From Hyphochytrium catenoides (taxonomy: Eukaryota > Protista > Hyphochytriomycota), in assembly GCA_900088475.1 (NCBI GenBank), contig FLMG01000368.1, forward strand, positions 162,822-226,821: a stretch of DNA of 64,000 bases, read 5' to 3'. Under the pieces are notes generated by a model. It saw nothing but the letters and a program-made list of their open reading frames with translations. It ran no database searches and was not told where the DNA came from. The translations under genes were made by a program, and so were the position numbers. Position 1 is the first letter of the stretch. Each line of letters begins with the position of its first letter. Shown piece by piece: positions 19,178 to 31,675 of the stretch.

Positions 19178-21765
19178 CTATCGTTTCATGTTGTTCAATC
19201 CGGCTGGTGGCAGGACCGCACTGGCCGGGACCGGAAGGAGCCGATGGGGGAACACGCTAGAGGTTAGCTTCCCGCCGTGAGTGGGCTGTGCTAGCCTCCC
19301 GCCTTTGAGGGGATTCTTTCTTGAGGGTATCTTCAGGTCCGATACCGTCAGTTTACCCCTACCTTCTTGCATTCGAAAGCTGTTATGCCCCTGCTCCTCA
19401 GAGTCATTCCGTCCGAGTTCCTGGAGATTACCCTGCCTTTGTCGTGCTAACTCCTCTTCGTCAGACTTCTGGATGCCATGCTGTTTCTCTCGCCTGAGAG
19501 GGCTATTGCCTGCCGACTGTGGCTTACTTGACCGTGGGTCATCAGGTGAAGCGTCCCCCAGTGGCTCGTTCGCAAGTGGCAAGTGGGAGTTTGCTCTGAG
19601 TATTGAGGCCTGTGCTGAGAGAGCTGATAGGCCTTGCTGCTGTCCCATCTGCTTCATTTGTCTTTGTCCAATTGGGGACGCTGATGGGGAGCGCCTAGGA
19701 GATAGAGAAGGCTGGACAGTGCCAGAAGGTAGGTCATTGAAGAAGAAAGGGTTGTCTCTTTGGTCCATGAGTACAGTCTGTGGAACGTGAATAGGTGAAG
19801 ATGGAGGCCGCGTTCCCGGCTTATCAGGGCTCCCGTTATGCGTAGCCACTTCACTCCCGTTAACACCTGTTGTCACGGATAACCCTCGGCCGAAGCGTGA
19901 CAGTGGTCTATCGAGGAGTAGAGAAGGATCAGAATTGTGATTAGGTTGATGGTCTATGGGCGTTACTGGAGTCACTTTGATGGGGCCTGAGCGTTCTAGA
20001 CTTTCAGATCTCGGTTCATGCTTCCAGAGCTGGTCCTCAGCTACGTTAAAAGCCTTGTGAGGGATAATGCCACGAGCAGGAGACCTAGGATGATCTCCCT
20101 TAGCCTTGTGAGACAAGTTCCGCCTACCCGCCCTTCCTCCGTTTGCGTCATGAGCATCCTGCCTGGGGCTAACCTTGAAAAGCTCATGGCACCGCAGAAT
20201 AACCTCTGATGTCTCTTTCTCCCTTTGCTTTTCTCGGCCTAATCGGAGCTTGGAGCTACTGATAATAAGTTGCAATGTGTTGGTTCCTTTCGCCGCTACT
20301 TGGAAGCTTTTTATATCCGAATAGAGCAAGACGAATGCCTCCACAATGTTTGAGCTAGCCAGCACTCCGTGACGCAAAGGCAAGCCTACTTGGGCTAACG
20401 CCTCACCACCCACCACTTCTCCTGTAGCGATGATGGCGACCTCAGTCGTTGCTCCTCTGTAATCTCGGCTCGTCGAGCTCCACTGGGGAAGACGGCCGTT
20501 GACGACGGTCGTTAGGCGGTTAATGACGGACTGTCTCCGTCGAGGTCGTCCTAACTCTTCTTTGACTCGCTTTAGAACCGAGAGGTCTGGTCCTGGGAAG
20601 TCTTTATCGCGCCCGTTCGGGGGTAAGACGCGCTTGACAATCTTTACCTCACCGGATTTAATGAAGATGATGTTAGGTGTCTTGTCCCCTTCCTCAAGCA
20701 AGGGATCCCCAATGCTATACTTTCGTTTGGAAAGCAGCCGTGCCATTGTGATCAACCGATGATGCGGCCATCCTTTAAAGTATTTATTCTTCGACAAAAA
20801 GGAAGTCTTCTCCGCTGCAAAAGTAGTGCGAAAAGATAGAAGCAGCATCAGGACAGGGTTCCGACAGTCAAATGACAGTGACCGAGCTTCAATGCCTCAC
20901 CTTGCTCCATGGCCTCCACATGATACTGGGCAAAGCTTCGATGGTATAGCTGCTTTGGAACTGCGATCATCTCCACGAATCCGTCCGCGACAGCTGATGC
21001 AGTACGCCGAATGCCGTCTTCAAATAGCGCCACTTCTCCAAAGCCAGCCCCGGTGGGCACTGTGGCAACTCTTACACCTGCAGGCGGCATCAATAGACAA
21101 CGGTGGAGTCACTGGTGGTCAAAAATAGTTCATTCCAAGGTCACCCGTACAACCCTAATCCTAACCCTACCTACCGAGGTAATCGCCTTTGAGGTCATTG
21201 TTCGCCGCAGCTTGCTTACGATCAGCCTTCAGTTCCACCAGGGAGCTAACAGGAGCACCGGCAAAGATGGCGACCTTGCCTGAGAAGATAATATAATAAT
21301 GGGTCCCAAAGTCACCTTGAAGAAAGATGAGATCGGCATCGGAGTAGGAGATGAACTCCATGTTCATGAGGACATCGTCCACAGCGCCTGAGTCAGTGCT
21401 TCTAAACGTCTTGGACTGCATCTCATAGGCCCATTCTTTAAGCCGCGCTACTTGCTCAAGGGTGCGCTGTCCCGGTATCGATTCTTGCAGTGCTTTCCTA
21501 GCATTTTCAACTATGGCTTCAAGCCTCTTCTTCTCCGCCAGTTCGCGCATCTGCTTGGTGAACCATTGCCAGCGGATAAACCCTTGCCTTTGATTGGCAC
21601 GTACCAACTTTCGGTGCAAATTCTCAATGAGCGAACGCTCATGGAGTCCAAACTGCTGCGACATTATTGGGATGCTTTTGCAACTAGTCGTGGCGACGTG
21701 ATTCGACACGCAGTGCTGGCTAATTATACCCTTTGCAGAAGGAACTCGTTGTCGGTGCTATTCAT
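19178..21765 (-). CDS. Tandem cyclic-nucleotide-binding domain protein with a long disordered tail (CNBD-like)
   Basis: IFLQGDFGTHYYIIFSGKV..FGEVALFEDGIRRTASAVA, then a second degenerate CNB (LLEEGDKTPNIIFIKSGEV). The first exon MNSTDNEFLLQR splices in frame. Confidence 0.82.
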
Positions 21766-23559: not shown

Positions 23560-26500
23560 TTACCAAGCTTTCATGCCTGGTCTCTCCCCAGCTGCGGAAG
23601 AAAAGTCATAGCTCAATAACTTCATTTTCTCATAACCCACAAAAGTTACTACCGCCACCGGAGTTGTCTTGAGCATATTTGGAACCAGCCCTCGATATAA
23701 GGCACGGATGCCTCCTTCCCGCACCGTCGCGCTGAAGGCATGCAATGCGCCCCTATATGTTGGGAAGGTGACTGAACCCTCCCATGCTCCCTGCACCTGC
23801 AGTTTCCGTCGGACGACGTCCAGGGGATAGGTGACCACCTGAGCAATCCCAGAGGACAAAACGCTGCACGCCAGCTGCGAGATCACTGCAGGATGACCCA
23901 GCTCTTTGCTTTTGGTGTGATGAACCACCACCGCAGGCCGAAAGAGCTCATAGAGAGTGTAACTCAGACCGATGTAGGGCACAGCACCCAAGGCTGAAGG
24001 CCAGAAGCCCCGATAGAGAGCCCAGACTCCTTCATCTCGCACCACTGTAGATATAAGATGAGCGATAGAATTGTATCTTGCCTTAGGTCCATAGGCTTGT
24101 TGAACTGTCATCCGTGCCCTAGCAAACTCCAGAGGGTAAACTGCGGCCGTTGTGAAGAACCCTGCCATGCCCCCAGCGAGCAAGTTCACAACCTCGGGCG
24201 AGAGCTTTCTGTCTGAACTTCTCAGAAACCCTTGAAAGGTGTTGAAGAGTGTGAAATTGAGCGGAATTGTTGGTATAAGGCGCACTGCGTTGGCGCCATT
24301 ACCCACGAAGAAGCCTCTGATACCGTTATTCTGCAGAATCCTCCCAGCTGCGGACCTGACATGGGAATAGGGGCTCACTGCCGCCGGCCGAGTTTGCATC
24401 AACAGCTTGATTCGTTCAAACGGAGCGACAACTGCTCGAGCCGCAATAGCAGCAACGATGGCTGACAAAAGGGTAACTGCCTTTCTGCCTTCAAGCTCAA
24501 TGTCCTCCGGAGGCTTCTTGTTGACTCCTAGTGAGGGTAGACGCAGCGCAGAGTCCAGCTGAGATTTCTCCCAGATAGCCTGAAATCTGTTAAATTGTGA
24601 AACAGGCAAAGAGAAGGTCAACCTTGATTAATAGAGGGTGGACAAATGGAAGGTCAATATTTCCCGCCGCCAACTTACCCTATGACGTCCTCCCTGATTT
24701 GACTCAGACATTGGCGGAGGATCAAGGGATGCTTCTTAGTCTTTAATACTAGGCGAGTGAAGTCATCGAATGATAGGGTACGAGAGCCGTCCGGACCAAA
24801 GGTAGCTTGAACGAAGTTGAGAAAGTCTGCGGAGGATACGTTTTCATTGTGCTCCTCAGCCCATGAGTTCAGCCCAGCGACGAACTCCTCTCTGCTAATT
24901 AGGCCCGTCTTGACGGCAGTGGGACAGAGTAAGCGAAAGGCAACATCTATTCCCAAGTTGGGAGGAAGAGACGGATGTAACGTTAGAAAGCGCGAATCTT
25001 TCACAAGCCTTTCTTACGCGTTTCCTCACCTGCCAGAACTTTGTCCGTCTTTTTTTCTGAAAAGAGCATGTCAAAGTGAGCAAACTGGGAGAAGTTGATG
25101 ACGCCAGTCTGGTTCGGGTCAATAAGGCGCTCTGCGAGCTTGATGTGTGCCTTGCTGACCCTGACAGGTGCTTCATTCCTGTCACTGGAGCCCTTGCCTT
25201 GCTGATTGCTGTGGCACAGAAGCTGAGAGGTCGCTATTAGCTAATAGTAAAGGGGGAGTCTCTAAATAGCTCACATCAACCAACCAACCTTAAGAAAGTC
25301 TTCCACTTTCATGAAGTACTCGCCTTGGTCTTGGATGGTGCTCAGCGTTTTAAATATCTCGTACAGATGACTAGTGCCACTGAGCGCCAGAGAAGTGAAG
25401 TTGTCCCTAGTAAGGGCCCATATTTTAGCGTCCTTCTTCACTCTGACTGTCGCCCCTCTGGGGCTATTATACAGAAGCGCCGCCTCTCCAAAGCTACTTC
25501 CAGGGCCCAGAAGCTGCACCATCTGTGGGGATGGAGCCCCGGGCTTTCGTCGTAATATCTCACACTCTCCCTCCTCTATGACGTAAAAGTTATCCCCATA
25601 CTCTCCTTGGCGAATCACCTCTTCCCCACTCTTAAGATACAATGGAAAGAGGGCATTTGCAACCCTCTGCCGGCTGTGTCTATCTAATGGCTTGAAAATA
25701 CTATGAGATGAGAGGACACCAAAAAGAAAGCGTCTATCTCTCATCGTTTGCTTTGATAAAGCGTCCGCGTTGACAAAGTTCTGGAAAGCTGACTTGTCGA
25801 GCCGCCAAAGGATCACTTTGTCTACAAAACAAGATAGTCAAACAATGCACCGGCATCATGGCCGATTGGGCATGGCTCACTTACCTTCAGTGGACCTTGC
25901 TTGGACGGTCAGCGCTCGCTTGGTGTCATACAGTAGTGCAGAGTCTCCAAAGTAGTTAGTCTGCCCGTAAGTCAGAACCTTGACCTTAGGTCTGCCTTCT
26001 TTGTTCACGTAAGCGTCGCACTCTCCAGATCCCACTACATAGAAGTAATCTCCTTCATTCCCCTGATAGAATAACACCTCCTCATCTTGGGCCTCATATC
26101 GCTCAAAACAGTCGATTAGGCTCTCCTGGGCAGACTCTGCCAGAGAGCTGAAGAGTTGGTGCCTTCGCAGGCTCCGTCTGATGATTTCTCTTTCCTCTGA
26201 CGTCTCTGGATTGAGTCTTTCGACCATTGTGTCTGTGGAGTAGACCTTTTCATCTGCTAAATAAATTTCCTTTGACAGATGTGCCTGAGACGCCATGTGA
26301 GCACTCTTTGGTTTACCTCGAGATTAAATGGCCAGCAGTGAATGAACAGAGAGGATCAAAGTAATGGGATGAAGATGGGCTACACTTATAATGAGAGTCA
26401 GAGCCGACTTATAAGAAGTAAGAGCACGGCGCGTAAGGAGGGTGGTGGGACATACATCTCCTTTGAACGGTAGTACGTGATAAGAACTGGCGAAGTGATG

Positions 26501-27690
26501 AGGAAGGTAGGAACTGGAAGGTGGATAGGGTGCAAGAAGTCCGAGGTACTGATAGAGTCCTGCCACCAACTCGCTGCAAAACACCCGCGACGTGTCTTCC
26601 TCGTTCTCAAAGATGGACTTTTCTATCGACATGAACATGTGGGTCAGTTCATGCGTTTCAGTATCAATAGACTGGAGTCGAGTCTGGAGTGTTTGCCGTT
26701 GAAAATTTGTCAAGCGCTATCGGGCCATTGTTAGATGGCTATCGTCGTTGTTGCCAGAGGGGCTGATACAGTGCAATGAAGCTGAAATGGAAGAAGCAGC
26801 GCAAGAAAGGTAAAACTGCAGAGTGATCGCATAGAACAACAGGCGACAAGACAAGGACAGAGCCACCAAGGTAGCGGAATGGTCAAGATATCGGAGAAGA
26901 GATGCATGAACTAAGAGACTGGGAGACAGAGGAAAGGAGAGACAGAGAATGCTGAAATTGATAAGGACTTTGAGACGAAAAGCCGGGAGGAATCGCTGTA
27001 TAAGGAAAGGTGTATCTCCATACGGCAAAGATGTAAGGGAGAAGTACGGCTAACCTTGTTCTCAAGGTCAAACTTGATGTCCTCTTCCTCCTTTCTTTTC
27101 TTCATAAGGAGCTTTTGAACTCTTTCTCTGACGGCGCGGGCAGGGACTGTGAACTGGGCATTGAAGAACTTATCCAGTCTCTCTTCGTACTTCTTGTTGG
27201 ACATCATCTCACAGTATTCTAATGCCTTTGCACGAAGCTCATCAGTTCTTTGTATCTGTAGGCGTCGAATAGCTATCTGATTCGACCGACTGAATTTCAG
27301 TCTGTCTTGTAGGGGACGGAGCTTGGTCCCTGTCAGAGAGGCTTCTAGCACCATCAGCTCACCATTTCCATGTCGAACGATTACTCCTGTAGGTAGTAGT
27401 TGTCAAGAGTTAACTTCCATAGTGACGGCAAAGGTAAGCTTCCATCTATGAAGAGCTTACGTACCGATATGATCCCATCGTGACCCGGAGAATAGTTTAG
27501 CTGACACGCAGAGAAAGCCTCCCCATAAGTTCATCTTGGTACATTGCCGATCGAAGATAATAATATCGCCAGTGTCCAAGTTTCTGGGCAGGCGGAACTT
27601 CCCGATAAACTCCACCCGACTGTATGTGCGGAATAGCGGAGGGCGGTCCCTCAGGGTCGCGGTATCTGGACTTTGGTCTCTCCGTTCCAT
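23560..27690 (-). CDS. Fusion: permuted papain-like amidase (YiiX-like) + 2 cNMP-binding domains + EF-hands + mitochondrial carrier (SLC25)
   Basis: Seven GT-AG introns (27387-27464, 26717-27054, 26285-26455, 25822-25884, 25223-25288, 24947-25029, 24587-24678) give one 3240-nt frame. Motifs: GDIIIF/WDHIG/FCSELVA; FGDSALLYDTKRA and FGEAALLYNSPRGA; DPNQTGVINFSQF; carrier signatures PFERIK, PLEFAR, PLDVVR. The start codon is uncertain. Confidence 0.82.
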
Positions 27691-28749: not shown

Positions 28750-30122
28750 ATGCAGGAGCAAGAGACCTTTCTTCAAATCGCTGGAGCTTGCGCTGTCTTC
28801 ACCTCCAGCCAGGTACTGACAGAACACGATCTACTCATTGGTGGCGGGAAAATCTTGGGTATAAGCCAGCGCGAAGCAAGTCTACAGAAGGTACATAGAA
28901 ATGACAGTTACCCCCTCAGTCGATCATTACAAGCTGAGACGTCATCTTCCAGTTGGAACAAGAGAAACCTTTTGCGCCCAAAATCATAGATGCTGCTGGC
29001 AAAATAATTGTACCAGGCTTTGTTGATATCCATGTCCATGCAACAGGTGGTGGAGGAGAAAGTAGCTTCCGAAGCCGATGCCCAGGTACGAACAGCCCAA
29101 CGTCCATCGTTTCTTTGCTCTTCATGCCTAATGAGGCTTCATGCGCAGAGGCAACACTTTCGGAACTCCTCGATGCAGGAATAACTACTATTGTTGGAGT
29201 GCTTGGGACCGATTCGCTCTCCCGCAGCCTGGAGAATTTGTTCGCCAAGGTTAGACAGCTTCTTCGATGCTACATCTCCTCTACGCCTTCATCTTACAGT
29301 GTCTATTCTCAATAGGTGAAAGGGTTGACAGAGCAGGGTATAACAGGGTTCATGTACACAGGAGCGTATGCTGTGCCGTCACCCACCCTCACGGGAGCGG
29401 TGAAGCGGGACATGGTGCTCATTGATCCAGTGGTTGGATGCAAGCTTGCGATTTCTGACCATCGTGGGAGTTACCCAACCCGGCAGGAGCTGATTCGCCT
29501 TCTGAGTGAAGTTCGCGTAGGAGGGTTGACAGCTGGGAAGCAAGGAGTCCTATACTGTCATATGGGAAGCGATAAGGCGGGCCTCGAACCTTTGTGGCAA
29601 GTTCTGGAGCACACTTCAATTCCAATCAAACACTTAGTCCCAACGCATATGGCGCGGACGCCAGAGCTTCTGGAAGATGGTGTTCGATGGATTGAGGCAG
29701 GCGGCAGAATGGACTTCGCAGGATCTCCGGAAGCCCAAGTCCTGGCAGTAGTGGACCTCGTAAACCGGAATGTACCGTTGACCAACATCTCTATATCGAG
29801 TGACTCGTATGGATCCCTGCCCGTGTTTGGACCTTCACGAGAAGTCATTGACTACGCGTACGCCAAGCCACAAGAACTCTATGACCAATTCCGCGACCTC
29901 CATCTGCAGCACCAGTTACCTTTGGAAACGATCCTCCCTTTGTTCACCTGCAATCCAGCGGCATCGCATGGTCTGTCTGGAAAAGGGCAGATAGCAATAG
30001 GAGCCGATGCCGATTTCCTTGTACTCGACCCCATCACATTAGAGATTGAGTTGGTCTTTGCTAGGGGAAAATGTTTGAAAGGTGACCTAGGCAAATACAG
30101 ACGGCAGTATAGCCAAGGCTAG
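28750..30122 (+). CDS. iadA: Isoaspartyl dipeptidase (beta-aspartyl peptidase, amidohydrolase family)
   Basis: PGFVDIHVHATGGGGE, GITTIVGVLGTD, GCKLAISDHR, YCHMG, PTHM and SSDSYGS. Three introns (28891-28952, 29086-29148, 29250-29315). Confidence 0.93.
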
Positions 30123-30195: not shown

Positions 30196-31675
30196 CTATT
30201 TGAAGTATGGCAGGCGTAAGAGGGCTTCTGCATCTAGGCGGTCTTGTGGCCTCATCGTTAGTGACTTCTTCAGCACCTCGAGGGCATCAGCACTTGGCTG
30301 CCTTGGCGCCGTACGGAACAGCAACTCTAGCGGAATTCTGGGAAGAACTTTCACCGCCATCAACCTCTTTTGAAGGCTTCGGTCTAAATGGTCCAATGTA
30401 TTGAGAAGGTCCGCTGGGGGAGTGCCCAGAACAAGCAACATCTGCCCAGAGAGATAAGGTTGATTGAATGTCAAATGGCGGTGGCCGGGACAAGAATAGC
30501 TAATGGCCACGTTCTCACTTGGAGGAATTGCGTTGAGTCGTCCTTGCCGAGAAAGAGCGGTCGCTGCAGGAACATCTCGGCCATGACCGCGCCAAAGGCA
30601 TATAAATCCTGACAGTAAGATATATAAAGCAGAGTTCGACTTCCGCTGGCGGAACGATAGCTGGAATTTACCCACCACAGCCTTAGTGTACGCGCTAGTG
30701 CCAAGTAATAGCTCAGGTGCACGATAAGGCCTGCTGCCTACGTAGGGATCATGTGGCCCTGCCGAATCCTCTTTGGCTGCGCCGAAGTCACACAGGAAGA
30801 CGCTCTGGCCGCCTCGAATCATGATGTTCTTCGTACATGATCAGCGGTATTGCCCTTGCCAACCCTAAGAACAGGTGATAAGACCCTACCTGGGGCTTGA
30901 TATCCCTAGATGATATAAACAATGACGGTCTGAGTCCAATACATTACCCTTTCGACATAACCATGTCCCCATGTCCATACCGGTGTATGATGCCCAACTC
31001 GTGCACATAAGATATCGCTACATTGATGGATTCTGTCGTTAGTCCTCACACTTGTGGCCCCCGTCCAAACTACGAGGTAGTAGTAAAGCAGTCTGATACC
31101 TCTAAGCAACTGGCATAGTATATCCTTCATCCACTCTGCGGAGCACATTGAGACACCATTGGTGTTCTTTGGTTCATTGGCCACATTGGGATACAAGAAG
31201 CAAGTCAGAGGCGTCCCGCAATCATCCATGACAAGATTCCAGTATATATTCTCTGGCGATACTGCGGGACTCGCAAAAAAGAGATGGAGTCTTGGCACAC
31301 CTATCTTGCTGCCGGCTTCTCTATTGAGCATCATTAAAACCTTTATTTCTCTAGGAACCTTAAGCTCGTTCTGAGCGTCGCCGGGCGAAGTGATGGGGCT
31401 GGCATCTGAATATTCCTTGAACAACACGCGCTTGAGAACTATACGTTTACCCAATTGGTTATCAGGCCTGGCGGCACCATCTGCAGCTTCCCAGGCAACC
31501 AGATCACCGCCATAGACTGTGCCATCTAATAACATGCAATGAAGGTGTAAAAGGGTAGTTAAGGCACTGACACAAGTCGTTGAAAGCGTGCCAGAACTAG
31601 ACTAGAGGACAACTCACATGACCCTTTACTAAGCTTGTGGCGGAGTATGATCTCATAGTTGCTGTCCACGGACAT
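30196..31675 (-). CDS. CMGC protein kinase, divergent GSK3-like
   Basis: IVLKRV, REIKVL, IIHRDIKPQNIMI (spliced), LCDFGAAK, YVGSRPYRAPELLLG, RPLFLG and VLGTP. Confidence 0.85.

What the first reader, a model, noticed from the sequence alone, without database searches (positions are those of the whole stretch)
23560..27690. Single polypeptide: cysteine amidase + tandem cNMP sensors + EF-hands + mitochondrial carrier
Seen: six fragmented ORFs plus one exon missing from the track join through seven canonical introns into a 1079-aa frame. The key link is intron 26455-26285 (GAT|gtatgt..ctcac..ctcag|GCA), giving HHFASSYHVLPFKGD-AHLSKEIYL. The two-gene alternative leaves only 27 bp between a stop and the next ATG. 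Known: SLC25 carriers with N-terminal regulatory domains (SCaMC/APC, aralar/citrin) use EF-hands; I know of no characterised carrier with cNMP domains or a peptidase. Inference: an organellar nucleotide carrier gated jointly by cAMP and Ca2+ and coupled to an enzyme, acting as a second-messenger effector independent of PKA.
Basis: partly seen in the sequence, partly recalled or inferred. Interest (0 to 1): 0.92.

Follow-up and report, generated by a model that had tools for sequence, protein, structure and literature searches.

The report
Cyclic-nucleotide sensor fused to mitochondrial carrier
One real 1079-residue gene joins a thiol amidase, two cyclic-nucleotide sensors and a degenerate calcium-sensor scaffold to a mitochondrial-type nucleotide carrier. 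The same layout is already in oomycete and red-algal databases under automatic names, and I found no paper that studies it.

Summary
Eight minus-strand exons (27690-23560) join through seven GT..AG introns into one open 1079-aa frame.

The frame aligns end to end, across every junction, with full-length homologs. These carry the same order of domains: Peptidase_C92, two cNMP_binding domains, an EF-like region and three Mito_carr repeats.

Such homologs occur throughout oomycetes and red algae. In two red-algal-clade cases the protein is a single uninterrupted ORF. Intron 6 is spliced out in a contig from a run of a close relative. The two-gene alternative is therefore unlikely.

- The amidase keeps its His/Glu/Tyr/Cys centre.
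- CNB-B has a canonical phosphate-binding cassette and CNB-A a near-canonical one.
- The carrier keeps its three PxD/ExxK/R motifs and is closest to ADNT1, CoA and ATP-Mg/Pi carriers.
- The EF region is aralar/citrin-like but has no canonical Ca2+ loop here or in any oomycete ortholog examined.

Orthologs are public but carry only automatic names, and I found no paper describing them. Verdict: a real gene, a new variant of the regulated SLC25 carriers, function untested. The scan noted the EF/carrier part of this same stretch before (s1-371259).

The parts
27465..27690 (-). Exon 1. It holds the first in-frame ATG (27690), an unconserved N-terminus and the start of the YiiX-type (C92) domain, including catalytic His74 (27471-27469, motif WDH).
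   Evidence: The WDH motif is invariant in 15 aligned family members.
27055..27386 (-). Exon 2. C92 core with Glu90 (27345-27343, LEA) and Tyr142 (27189-27187, KYE), and the start of a helical hairpin insert.
   Evidence: Pfam Peptidase_C92 at 22.3 bits. Residues are invariant. YiiX alignment.
26456..26716 (-). Exon 3. The end of the helical insert and the catalytic Cys233 (26578-26576, FCSELVA), then the tail of the C92 domain.
   Evidence: The model of a homolog's N-terminal domain matches YiiX (2if6) and BcPPNE (3kw0).
26285..26455 (-). Intron 3 (171 nt, GTATGT..TCTCAG). This is the junction that decides between one gene and two. It contains the read-through stop (26326-26324) and an ATG at 26296 in frame with exon 4.
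   Evidence: Homologs are continuous across this point.
25885..26284 (-). Exon 4. Linker and CNB-A, whose phosphate-binding cassette reads FGDSALLYDTKRALTV (Asp387, Arg396).
   Evidence: Pfam cNMP_binding at 42.1 bits. Motif alignment.
25289..25821 (-). Exon 5. The end of CNB-A and all of CNB-B, whose cassette is canonical: FGEAALLYNSPRGATV (Glu519, Arg528).
   Evidence: Pfam cNMP_binding at 72.6 bits. Best solved-structure matches are PKA type I regulatory subunits, E 1.5e-43. Motifs.
25030..25222 (-). Exon 6. Variable linker and EF-like loop 1 (DPNQTGVINFSQ, with Gln at position 12). It aligns with the DQTKDGLISFQE loop of citrin.
   Evidence: The start of this exon has an in-frame alternative at 25208.
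24947..25029 (-). Intron 6 (83 nt), shown to be spliced out in a close relative.
   Evidence: A 159-nt contig of run X4 (organism B) joins 24946 to 25030, skipping 83 nt with ends CT..AC on the + strand.
24679..24946 (-). Exon 7. EF-like loops 2 (TAVKTGLISREE) and 3 (GPDGSRTLSFDD), both non-canonical, and the start of the helix that links to the carrier.
23560..24586 (-). Exon 8. Linker helix and the SLC25 carrier domain with three repeats, then the stop codon at 23562-23560. It carries the motifs PFERIK, PLEFAR and PLDVVR. The contact-point residues are Arg840, Gly938-Ala939 and Lys1044.
   Evidence: Pfam Mito_carr x3 at 208.9 bits. Model pLDDT 84.5. Nearest reviewed proteins are ADNT1, CoAc2 and SLC25A24. 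ADP/ATP carriers are the best PDB matches. Motifs.

Best explanation
SHOWN:
- This is one gene for a 1079-aa membrane protein.
- Its C-terminal third is an SLC25 carrier of the ADNT1 / CoA-carrier / ATP-Mg-Pi-carrier group.
- Its N-terminal two thirds carry three modules in order. First is a YiiX-type permuted NlpC/P60 thiol amidase or acyl-hydrolase with an intact His-Glu-Tyr-Cys centre and an ~85-residue helical hairpin insert. Second is a PKA-R-like tandem of cyclic-nucleotide-binding domains. Third is an aralar/citrin-type EF-hand scaffold without canonical Ca2+ loops.
- It belongs to a conserved, uncharacterised family of oomycetes and red algae. On the tree it branches at the base of the clade that holds all the oomycete orthologs.

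INFERRED:
- As in other carriers with N-terminal regulatory domains, the extension should face the intermembrane space or cytosol.
- Cyclic nucleotide binds mainly at CNB-B. I weakly favour cAMP, because the residue after the cassette Arg is Gly or Ala-like rather than Thr or Ser.
- This binding takes over the switching role that Ca2+ plays in APC and aralar carriers.
- The EF-like region acts as the mechanical coupler to the carrier's cytoplasmic side.
- The amidase works on a lipid or acyl-amide substrate at the same membrane surface, under the same control.
For: Gene model.

Collinear homologs.

Same Pfam layout in Achlya, Lagenidium, Phytophthora and a Logan contig. Wider oomycete and red-algal sets are, with source names.

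Single uninterrupted ORFs: L002 214-3831 and L003 1501-5169. Complete transcript ORFs with the full layout also exist, namely the TSA and Trinity entries P0217 and P0227.

Splicing: intron 6 is removed in the contig of run X4.

Tree: the window groups with P0255 and the oomycetes at 100/100 support. Red algae are the sister clade and C92-less forms lie outside.

Amidase: the catalytic tetrad is invariant in 15 sequences. It aligns with YiiX. The fold matches 2if6 and 3kw0 at E about 1e-4. The triad and oxyanion Tyr are defined in PMC3142127.

CNB domains: they resemble PKA RI and keep the cassette Arg and Glu/Asp.

EF region: a family profile hits citrin and aralar N-terminal domains at E 1.8e-9 and 1.1e-6.

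Carrier: motifs and contact points. Nearest reviewed carriers.
Against: - No RNA run of this organism was listed. Six of the seven junctions, including the decisive 26456/26284, rest on comparative evidence only.
- No ligand binding, transport or enzyme activity has been tested for any family member, as far as I could find.
- CNB-A has Asp in place of the cassette Glu. Red-algal orthologs have Leu, Phe or Met there, so one of the two sites may be weak or dead.
- The window's C92 piece alone scores below the Pfam cut-off.
- The fold test was run on an ortholog, and that model was of modest confidence (mean pLDDT 61.8).
- Organelle and topology are assumed from the carrier family.
- Pythium, Lagenidium, Phytophthora and Albugo orthologs carry Trp at carrier contact point I. 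That raises doubt about whether all family members transport.
Confidence: 0.55

Rival explanations
1. There are two genes. An amidase gene (exons 1-3) reads through to the stop at 26326-26324. A separate CNB-EF-carrier gene starts at ATG 26296. A milder form of this rival is one locus with an internal promoter that also makes a C92-less isoform.
For: The ATG at 26296 is in frame with exon 4, and the read-through stop lies 27 bp upstream of it. C92-less CNB-EF-carrier proteins exist as a separate clade in other eukaryotes. No RNA data exist for this organism.
Against: Oomycete and red-algal orthologs examined are continuous across this exact point, with a conserved motif straddling it. L002 and L003 encode the whole layout as one ORF. 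The read-through peptide lies where the homolog alignments run straight on without a gap. A 27-bp spacer leaves no room for a terminator and a promoter.
Confidence: 0.07
2. One reading: the carrier is gated jointly by cAMP and Ca2+.
For: The EF region is homologous to the Ca2+-regulatory domains of citrin and aralar. Most of the red-algal orthologs tested keep one canonical EF loop, and C92-less relatives keep one or two. EF-1 here keeps 5 of 6 ligand positions.
Against: There is no PROSITE-type EF loop in the window protein or in any of the eight oomycete orthologs tested. EF-1 has Gln at the bidentate position 12, and EF-2 has Thr and Val at positions 1 and 3. Pfam EF-hand scores are below the cut-off.
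Confidence: 0.12
3. The cyclic-nucleotide module controls the amidase, as a PKA regulatory subunit controls its catalytic subunit. The carrier serves mainly as a membrane anchor or has lost transport.
For: The catalytic tetrad is invariant, and it is the most conserved part of the N-terminal module. YiiX-type enzymes are proposed to act on lipid-linked substrates at membranes (PMC3142127). Pythium, Lagenidium, Phytophthora and Albugo orthologs replace contact-point I Arg/Lys by Trp.
Against: In the window protein all three PxD/ExxK/R motifs and the R/G-A/K contact points are intact. The carrier is as well conserved as the rest. C92-less relatives keep CNB, EF and carrier together, which argues that the CNB-carrier link is the older functional unit.
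Confidence: 0.2
4. The CNB domains no longer bind nucleotide and serve only as a structural or dimerising module.
For: CNB-A cassettes are degenerate in red algae.
Against: The CNB-B cassette FGE...PRGATV is canonical and nearly invariant from red algae to oomycetes. Exon 5 matches PKA RI at E 1.5e-43.
Confidence: 0.08

Closest known systems
Uncharacterised orthologs in public databases. Examples: Achlya hypogyna OQR92581.1 'Mitochondrial Carrier (MC) Family', Phytophthora infestans 'Mitochondrial carrier protein' (P0173), Cyanidioschyzon merolae 'similar to mitochondrial calcium-dependent solute carrier' (P0252), Gracilariopsis chorda 'ADNT1' (P0226).
   Same: Same domain order from end to end, at 30-37% identity. 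The catalytic tetrad and the CNB-B cassette are the same.
   Different: The window protein is a separate early branch. It is shorter in the linkers. It keeps Arg at carrier contact point I, as red algae do. It lacks the canonical EF loop that most of the red-algal members tested retain. None of these orthologs has a described function that I could find.
ATP-Mg/Pi carriers (APC / SCaMC, SLC25A23/24/25; Arabidopsis APC2)
   Same: An SLC25 carrier with an N-terminal regulatory domain. The carrier domain is 24-29% identical and among the best reviewed matches. JGI's automatic KO name for some relatives is the same.
   Different: APC has four canonical EF-hands and no CNB or enzyme domain. Here there is no canonical EF loop. 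The EF region's profile matches citrin and aralar regulatory domains rather than any APC/SCaMC regulatory domain among the hits shown.
Aralar / citrin (SLC25A12/13) N-terminal domain
   Same: The EF-like region's family profile matches citrin residues 77-182 (E 1.8e-9) and aralar (E 1.1e-6). The match includes the segment that aligns with citrin's DQTKDGLISFQE loop.
   Different: The carrier domain is not of the aspartate/glutamate type. There is no C-terminal domain. Loop position 12 is Gln here.
ADNT1, CoA carriers (CoAc1/2) and Brittle-1
   Same: These are the nearest reviewed carrier domains. ADNT1 is 33% identical, E 7e-18. The Atlas feature search gives SLC25A16-like and ADNT1-like clusters.
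   Different: Those carriers have no regulatory N-terminal extension. The substrate of the window protein is unknown.
PKA type I regulatory subunit (tandem CNB-A/CNB-B)
   Same: Two CNB domains in tandem. Exon 5 aligns with both CNB domains of RI-beta (E 1.5e-43). The cassette Arg and Glu are kept.
   Different: No docking/dimerisation domain and no conserved inhibitor site were seen. The module is covalently joined to a membrane carrier and an amidase, and does not bind a kinase.
YiiX (2if6) / BcPPNE (3kw0), the YaeF/YiiX-like permuted NlpC/P60 enzymes (Pfam Peptidase_C92)
   Same: Permuted order, with His before Cys. The Cys-His-Glu triad and oxyanion Tyr are conserved. The fold of a homolog matches.
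   Different: About 85 residues of helical hairpin are inserted between the Tyr and the Cys, where YiiX has 13 residues. The domain is fused to sensor and carrier domains. The substrate is unknown.

Membership tests
SLC25 mitochondrial carrier family | Three tandem repeats of about 100 residues (Pfam Mito_carr) | tested here: met
   Three stretches, 208.9 bits against a cut-off of 22.3.
SLC25 mitochondrial carrier family | PX[DE]XX[KR] signature on helices 1, 3 and 5 | tested here: met
   PFERIK (from 793), PLEFAR (from 889) and PLDVVR (from 992).
SLC25 mitochondrial carrier family | Six-helix bundle fold | tested here: met
   AlphaFold model with pLDDT 84.5 and pTM 0.83. TM-score 0.72-0.78 to reviewed carriers.
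SLC25 mitochondrial carrier family | Transport activity and inner-membrane location | not testable with these tools
   Needs reconstitution and localisation.
Ca2+-regulated carriers (APC/SCaMC, aralar/citrin) | At least one canonical Ca2+-binding EF loop in the N-terminal domain | tested here: not met
   No PROSITE EF loop in the window protein. Pfam EF-hand scores of 14.3 and 20.1 bits are below the cut-off of 25.4. EF-1 has Gln at position 12.
Ca2+-regulated carriers (APC/SCaMC, aralar/citrin) | EF-hand-type regulatory domain directly N-terminal of the carrier | tested here: met
   A profile of the region hits citrin (4p5w, E 1.8e-9), aralar (4p5x) and calmodulins.
Cyclic-nucleotide-binding domain (Pfam cNMP_binding), PKA-R-like tandem | Two CNB domains above the Pfam cut-off | tested here: met
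   42.1 and 72.6 bits against a cut-off of 27.5. PKA RI is the best solved match.
Cyclic-nucleotide-binding domain (Pfam cNMP_binding), PKA-R-like tandem | Phosphate-binding cassette with the ribose-binding Glu and the phosphate-binding Arg | tested here: met
   CNB-B has Glu519 and Arg528 and is canonical. CNB-A has Asp387 and Arg396, so only the Arg is strictly kept.
Cyclic-nucleotide-binding domain (Pfam cNMP_binding), PKA-R-like tandem | Actual binding of cAMP or cGMP | not testable with these tools
   Needs a binding assay.
Peptidase_C92 / YaeF-YiiX-like permuted NlpC/P60 | Pfam score above the gathering cut-off | tested here: inconclusive
   The window's exon 2 alone scores 22.3 bits against a cut-off of 27, and the domain is split over exons 1-4. 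Orthologs P0110 (43.2 bits) and P0041 (32.7 bits) pass.
Peptidase_C92 / YaeF-YiiX-like permuted NlpC/P60 | Permuted catalytic residues: His, then the polar third residue, then the oxyanion Tyr, then Cys at a helix start | tested here: met
   His74, Glu90, Tyr142 and Cys233 are invariant in 15 sequences. They align with the YiiX residues defined in PMC3142127.
Peptidase_C92 / YaeF-YiiX-like permuted NlpC/P60 | YiiX-like fold | tested here: met
   Tested on ortholog P0110 residues 1-330, not on the window protein. Foldseek gives 2if6 and 3kw0 at E 1e-4 to 7e-4, probability 1.00, rmsd 2.4-3.3 A. Model pLDDT is only 61.8.

The most novel reading that the evidence does not exclude
The carrier and the amidase form one working unit switched by cyclic nucleotide. 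The thiol enzyme makes or consumes the carrier's substrate at the mouth of the carrier, for example by removing an acyl group from a nucleotide-cofactor or lipid-amide conjugate. A second messenger would then directly control a coupled reaction-plus-transport step at the organelle membrane, without any kinase.
Probability: 0.12. Interest if true: 0.9.

Novelty: new variant of a known kind. Interest (0 to 1): 0.62.

Why it matters
The mitochondrial carriers with regulatory domains that I know of, the ATP-Mg/Pi and aspartate/glutamate carriers, sense Ca2+. This statement rests on my own knowledge.

A carrier that carries PKA-R-like cyclic-nucleotide sensors in the same position would be a direct, kinase-independent route from cAMP or cGMP to the organelle's nucleotide or cofactor pool. 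It would also carry a conserved thiol enzyme of unknown substrate.

The family is conserved across oomycetes, which include major crop and fish pathogens, and across red algae. Both groups contain organisms in which it could be studied at the bench.

The related forms differ in how many canonical Ca2+ loops they keep:
- C92-less relatives have canonical Ca2+ loops.
- Red-algal forms have one loop.
- The window protein and the oomycete forms have none.

These forms therefore offer natural variants for asking how regulatory modules are exchanged on SLC25 carriers.

Tried and rejected
RNA evidence:
- Two run searches listed no RNA run for this organism.
- The one read-laying run gave DNA contigs, plus one spliced contig from a relative covering intron 6 only.

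Searches limited by the tools:
- The whole spliced protein could not be handed to the tools by reference. I searched exon pieces and used homolog ids for the full-length searches.
- None of the three word-based homolog searches listed the window's own annotated protein. I cannot say how the public annotation models this gene.

False leads:
- The best-scoring carrier hits, P0001-P0012, turned out to be tandem double carriers that score twice. They are not relatives of interest.
- The 637-aa Phytophthora fragariae models are the C-terminal half (654-1290) of the 1290-aa model. They do not show a split at the C92/CNB boundary.
- An RRSL motif before CNB-A looked like a PKA inhibitor site but is not conserved in homologs.

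Literature: six searches for a CNB-bearing carrier found nothing relevant. The one oomycete paper that held all the terms mentions them separately.

Weak result: the sequence-profile search of the C92 region against PDB was weak (YiiX, E 0.038). It was accepted only together with the Pfam and fold results.
Full report
**1. The observation**

The region 23560-27690 was read on the minus strand and the exons were joined by script. There are eight exons:
- 27690-27465
- 27386-27055
- 26716-26456
- 26284-25885
- 25821-25289
- 25222-25030
- 24946-24679
- 24586-23560

They give 3240 nt, that is 1079 codons and a stop, with no internal stop. All seven introns are GT..AG and 63-338 nt long.

Reading through from exon 3 meets a stop at 26326-26324. 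An ATG at 26296 lies 27 bp further on, in frame with exon 4. Exon 6 is in no listed ORF in its own frame, so it is the 'missing' exon.

Enumerating alternative splice pairs shows that introns 3 and 5 have other in-frame GT..AG solutions. For intron 5, the pair 25275/25208 (GTGAGC..CCACAG) is at least as good as the chosen one. It changes only a few linker residues and not the length.

**2. Domain content**

Pfam on the exon pieces gives:

| Exon | Pfam family | Bits | Cut-off |
|---|---|---|---|
| 2 | Peptidase_C92 | 22.3 | 27 |
| 4 | cNMP_binding | 42.1 | 27.5 |
| 5 | cNMP_binding | 72.6 | 27.5 |
| 6 | EF-hand_1 | 14.3 | 25.4 |
| 7 | EF-hand_1 | 20.1 | 25.4 |
| 8 | Mito_carr x3 | 208.9 | 22.3 |

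**3. One gene or two**

No RNA run of this organism was listed. Laying the four best runs gave genomic contigs. One 159-nt contig came from run X4, a relative with about 94% nucleotide identity in exon 8. It joins 24946 directly to 25030, which removes exactly intron 6.

The rest of the evidence is comparative, and it is strong.

*Same layout in long relatives.* An exhaustive HMMER search with the carrier exon found long proteins whose C-terminal end matches. Apart from tandem double carriers that score twice, the best match is P0008 (1044 aa, 40% identity).

Pfam shows that P0008, P0024, P0041 and P0110 all carry Peptidase_C92, two or three cNMP_binding stretches and three Mito_carr repeats; P0110 also carries an EF-hand. 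Their sources are Achlya hypogyna, Lagenidium giganteum, Phytophthora species and a Logan contig.

*Taxonomic range.* Word-based searches seeded with P0008, P0110 and P0255 extend the family.
- Oomycetes: Saprolegnia, Thraustotheca, Aphanomyces, Pythium, Globisporangium, Phytophthora, Peronospora, Bremia, Plasmopara, Hyaloperonospora, Albugo.
- Red algae: Cyanidioschyzon, Cyanidiococcus, Galdieria, Rhodosorus, Porphyridium, Gracilariopsis.
- Many unnamed metagenomic or Logan proteins.

*Collinearity.* The spliced window protein aligns collinearly with them. BLASTP gives single alignments over residues 37-1062 (P0167), 40-1060 (P0008), 24-1057 (P0241) and 34-1057 (P0247). The multiple alignment is continuous at junctions 1-4, 6 and 7. 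That includes the C92/CNB junction, where homologs read Q-(G)-G-A-S-(Y/F)-L-P-E-(L/I)-S-L. Junction 5 lies in a variable linker.

*Single ORFs elsewhere.* In two cases the whole layout is one uninterrupted ORF. These are L002 214-3831, on a 4.1-kb Logan contig, and L003 1501-5169, on a 39-kb genomic contig encoding the C. merolae protein. Complete transcript ORFs with the full Pfam set also exist: the TSA entry P0217 and the Trinity entry P0227.

I put the strict two-gene reading at about 7%. An extra C92-less isoform starting at ATG 26296 cannot be excluded.

**4. Position in the family**

A maximum-likelihood tree of 26 full-length proteins gives these groupings:
- The window protein groups with P0255 plus all the oomycete orthologs at 100/100 support. 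It is the earliest branch in that clade.
- The red-algal proteins form the other C92-bearing clade, and with the long-branched P0256 they group with the window clade at 89/83.
- CNB-EF-carrier proteins without C92 lie outside. One of them is from the ichthyosporean Chromosphaera.

The root is a midpoint root, so the order of events is not established. If it holds, the CNB-EF-carrier core would be the older unit, with the amidase added in the lineage leading to the red-algal and stramenopile forms.

**5. The amidase**

His74, Glu90, Tyr142 and Cys233 are invariant in 15 sequences spanning the whole family. A family profile aligns WDH, LEA, PYE and FCS with the matching residues of E. coli YiiX. 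The triad and oxyanion tyrosine of YiiX and BcPPNE are defined by Xu et al. 2011 (PMC3142127). Those authors argue for lipid-like substrates and membrane association.

An AlphaFold model of the N-terminal 330 residues of ortholog P0110 has mean pLDDT 61.8, with 80-90 across most of the core. It shows the beta-sheet core, a long helical hairpin (143-207) and the cysteine helix. Foldseek finds only YiiX (2if6) and BcPPNE (3kw0) at significant E-values.

The hairpin of about 85 residues sits between the Tyr and the Cys, where YiiX has 13 residues.

**6. The sensors**

Exon 5 matches both CNB domains of PKA type I regulatory subunits (E 1.5e-43).
- CNB-B carries a canonical cassette, FGEAALLYNSPRGATV. 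It is nearly invariant from red algae to oomycetes.
- CNB-A reads FGDSALLYDTKRALTV. The Arg is kept but Glu is replaced by Asp. Red algae have Leu, Phe or Met at that position.
- Neither cassette has Thr or Ser after the Arg. From general knowledge of PKA and PKG cassettes, this weakly favours cAMP over cGMP.

**7. The EF region**

A profile of residues ~585-775 and its homologs best matches 9k6m_A, an EF-hand protein. The next best matches are the N-terminal regulatory domains of citrin (4p5w, E 1.8e-9) and aralar (4p5x, E 1.1e-6).

The PROSITE EF-loop pattern finds no loop in the window protein or in any of the eight oomycete orthologs. It finds one loop in seven of the ten sequences of the red-algal clade, and one or two in C92-less relatives.

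The three loops in the window protein are all non-canonical:
- Loop 1: DPNQTGVINFSQ, with Gln at position 12.
- Loop 2: TAVKTGLISREE.
- Loop 3: GPDGSRTLSFDD.

Ca2+ sensing is therefore doubtful in this branch.

**8. The carrier**

All three PxD/ExxK/R motifs are intact. The contact-point residues are Arg840, Gly938-Ala939 and Lys1044. The model is confident, with pLDDT 84.5.

The nearest reviewed proteins are ADNT1 (33% identity), the CoA carriers CoAc1/2, SLC25A24, Brittle-1, APC2 and thiamine diphosphate carriers. ADP/ATP carriers are the best solved structures. The Atlas feature search agrees.

The substrate class is therefore a nucleotide or nucleotide cofactor. The exact substrate is unknown.

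**9. Mechanism**

Shown: the layout, its conservation, and the intact catalytic, ligand-binding and carrier motifs.

Inferred:
- The N-terminal module faces the intermembrane space or cytosol.
- Cyclic nucleotide binding to the tandem CNB module replaces Ca2+ as the switch.
- The EF-like scaffold transmits the change to the carrier.
- The amidase acts at the same membrane surface.

Rival readings, each scored separately in the Rival explanations section:
- The sensors control the enzyme, and the carrier acts only as an anchor.
- Ca2+ is a co-regulator.
- The CNB domains are dead.

**10. Novelty**

Six literature searches found no description of a carrier with CNB domains or of this family. The only paper holding all the terms mentions them separately.

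The sequences themselves are public under automatic names. The gene is thus a new, early-branching member of an undescribed family. As a type, that family is a new variant of the N-terminally regulated SLC25 carriers.

Noticed in passing
window 26285-26455 (ATG at 26296-26294): The last 12 nt of intron 3 (ATGGCGTCTCAG) put an ATG in frame with exon 4. An internal start could give a C92-less CNB-EF-carrier isoform of about 810 aa. That would resemble the C92-less family found in other eukaryotes.
   Followed up: partly
window 25223-25288: Intron 5 has an equally in-frame alternative, 25275/25208 (GTGAGC..CCACAG), with a donor closer to consensus. The protein length stays 1079 aa and only a few linker residues change.
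   Followed up: yes
window 19178-21709, minus strand: The next gene downstream on the same strand has two long ORFs with motifs that look like cyclic-nucleotide-binding domains (GDFGTHYYIIFSGKVAIF and EGDKTPNIIFIKSGEVKIVKRV). A second CNB-type protein may lie next door.
   Followed up: no
window 28953-30122, plus strand: Two adjacent ORFs with an amidohydrolase-like motif (DIHVHATGGGGE). They may be an isoaspartyl-dipeptidase-type gene, divergent from the carrier gene with about 1.2 kb between the two starts.
   Followed up: no
window 30196-31535, minus strand: ORFs with protein-kinase-like motifs (for example SRPYRAPELLLG).
   Followed up: no
P0167, P0024, P0173, P0193 (orthologs), at the position of window Arg840: Pythium, Lagenidium, Phytophthora and Albugo orthologs have Trp at carrier contact point I (HCLWVIP). 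Saprolegnian orthologs and P0255 have Lys. The window protein and red algae have Arg. This hints at a changed substrate or lost transport in part of the family.
   Followed up: partly
P0242 (Porphyridium purpureum, 1989 aa): The public model joins the C92-CNB-EF-carrier protein to GTP cyclohydrolase II and 'uracil catabolism protein 4' domains. It is probably a merged gene model.
   Followed up: no
P0152, P0154, P0157, P0158 (Phytophthora fragariae, 630-637 aa): The two alternative public models tested (P0152, P0157) equal residues 654-1290 or 661-1290 of the 1290-aa protein, that is the EF-like region plus the carrier only. P0154 and P0158 are of the same length and were not tested.
   Followed up: yes
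P0280 (eukprot EG_transcript_1323, 912 aa) and P0034 (Chromosphaera perkinsii, 744 aa): CNB plus carrier fusions without the amidase occur in very distant eukaryotes. The sensor-carrier link is therefore widespread.
   Followed up: partly
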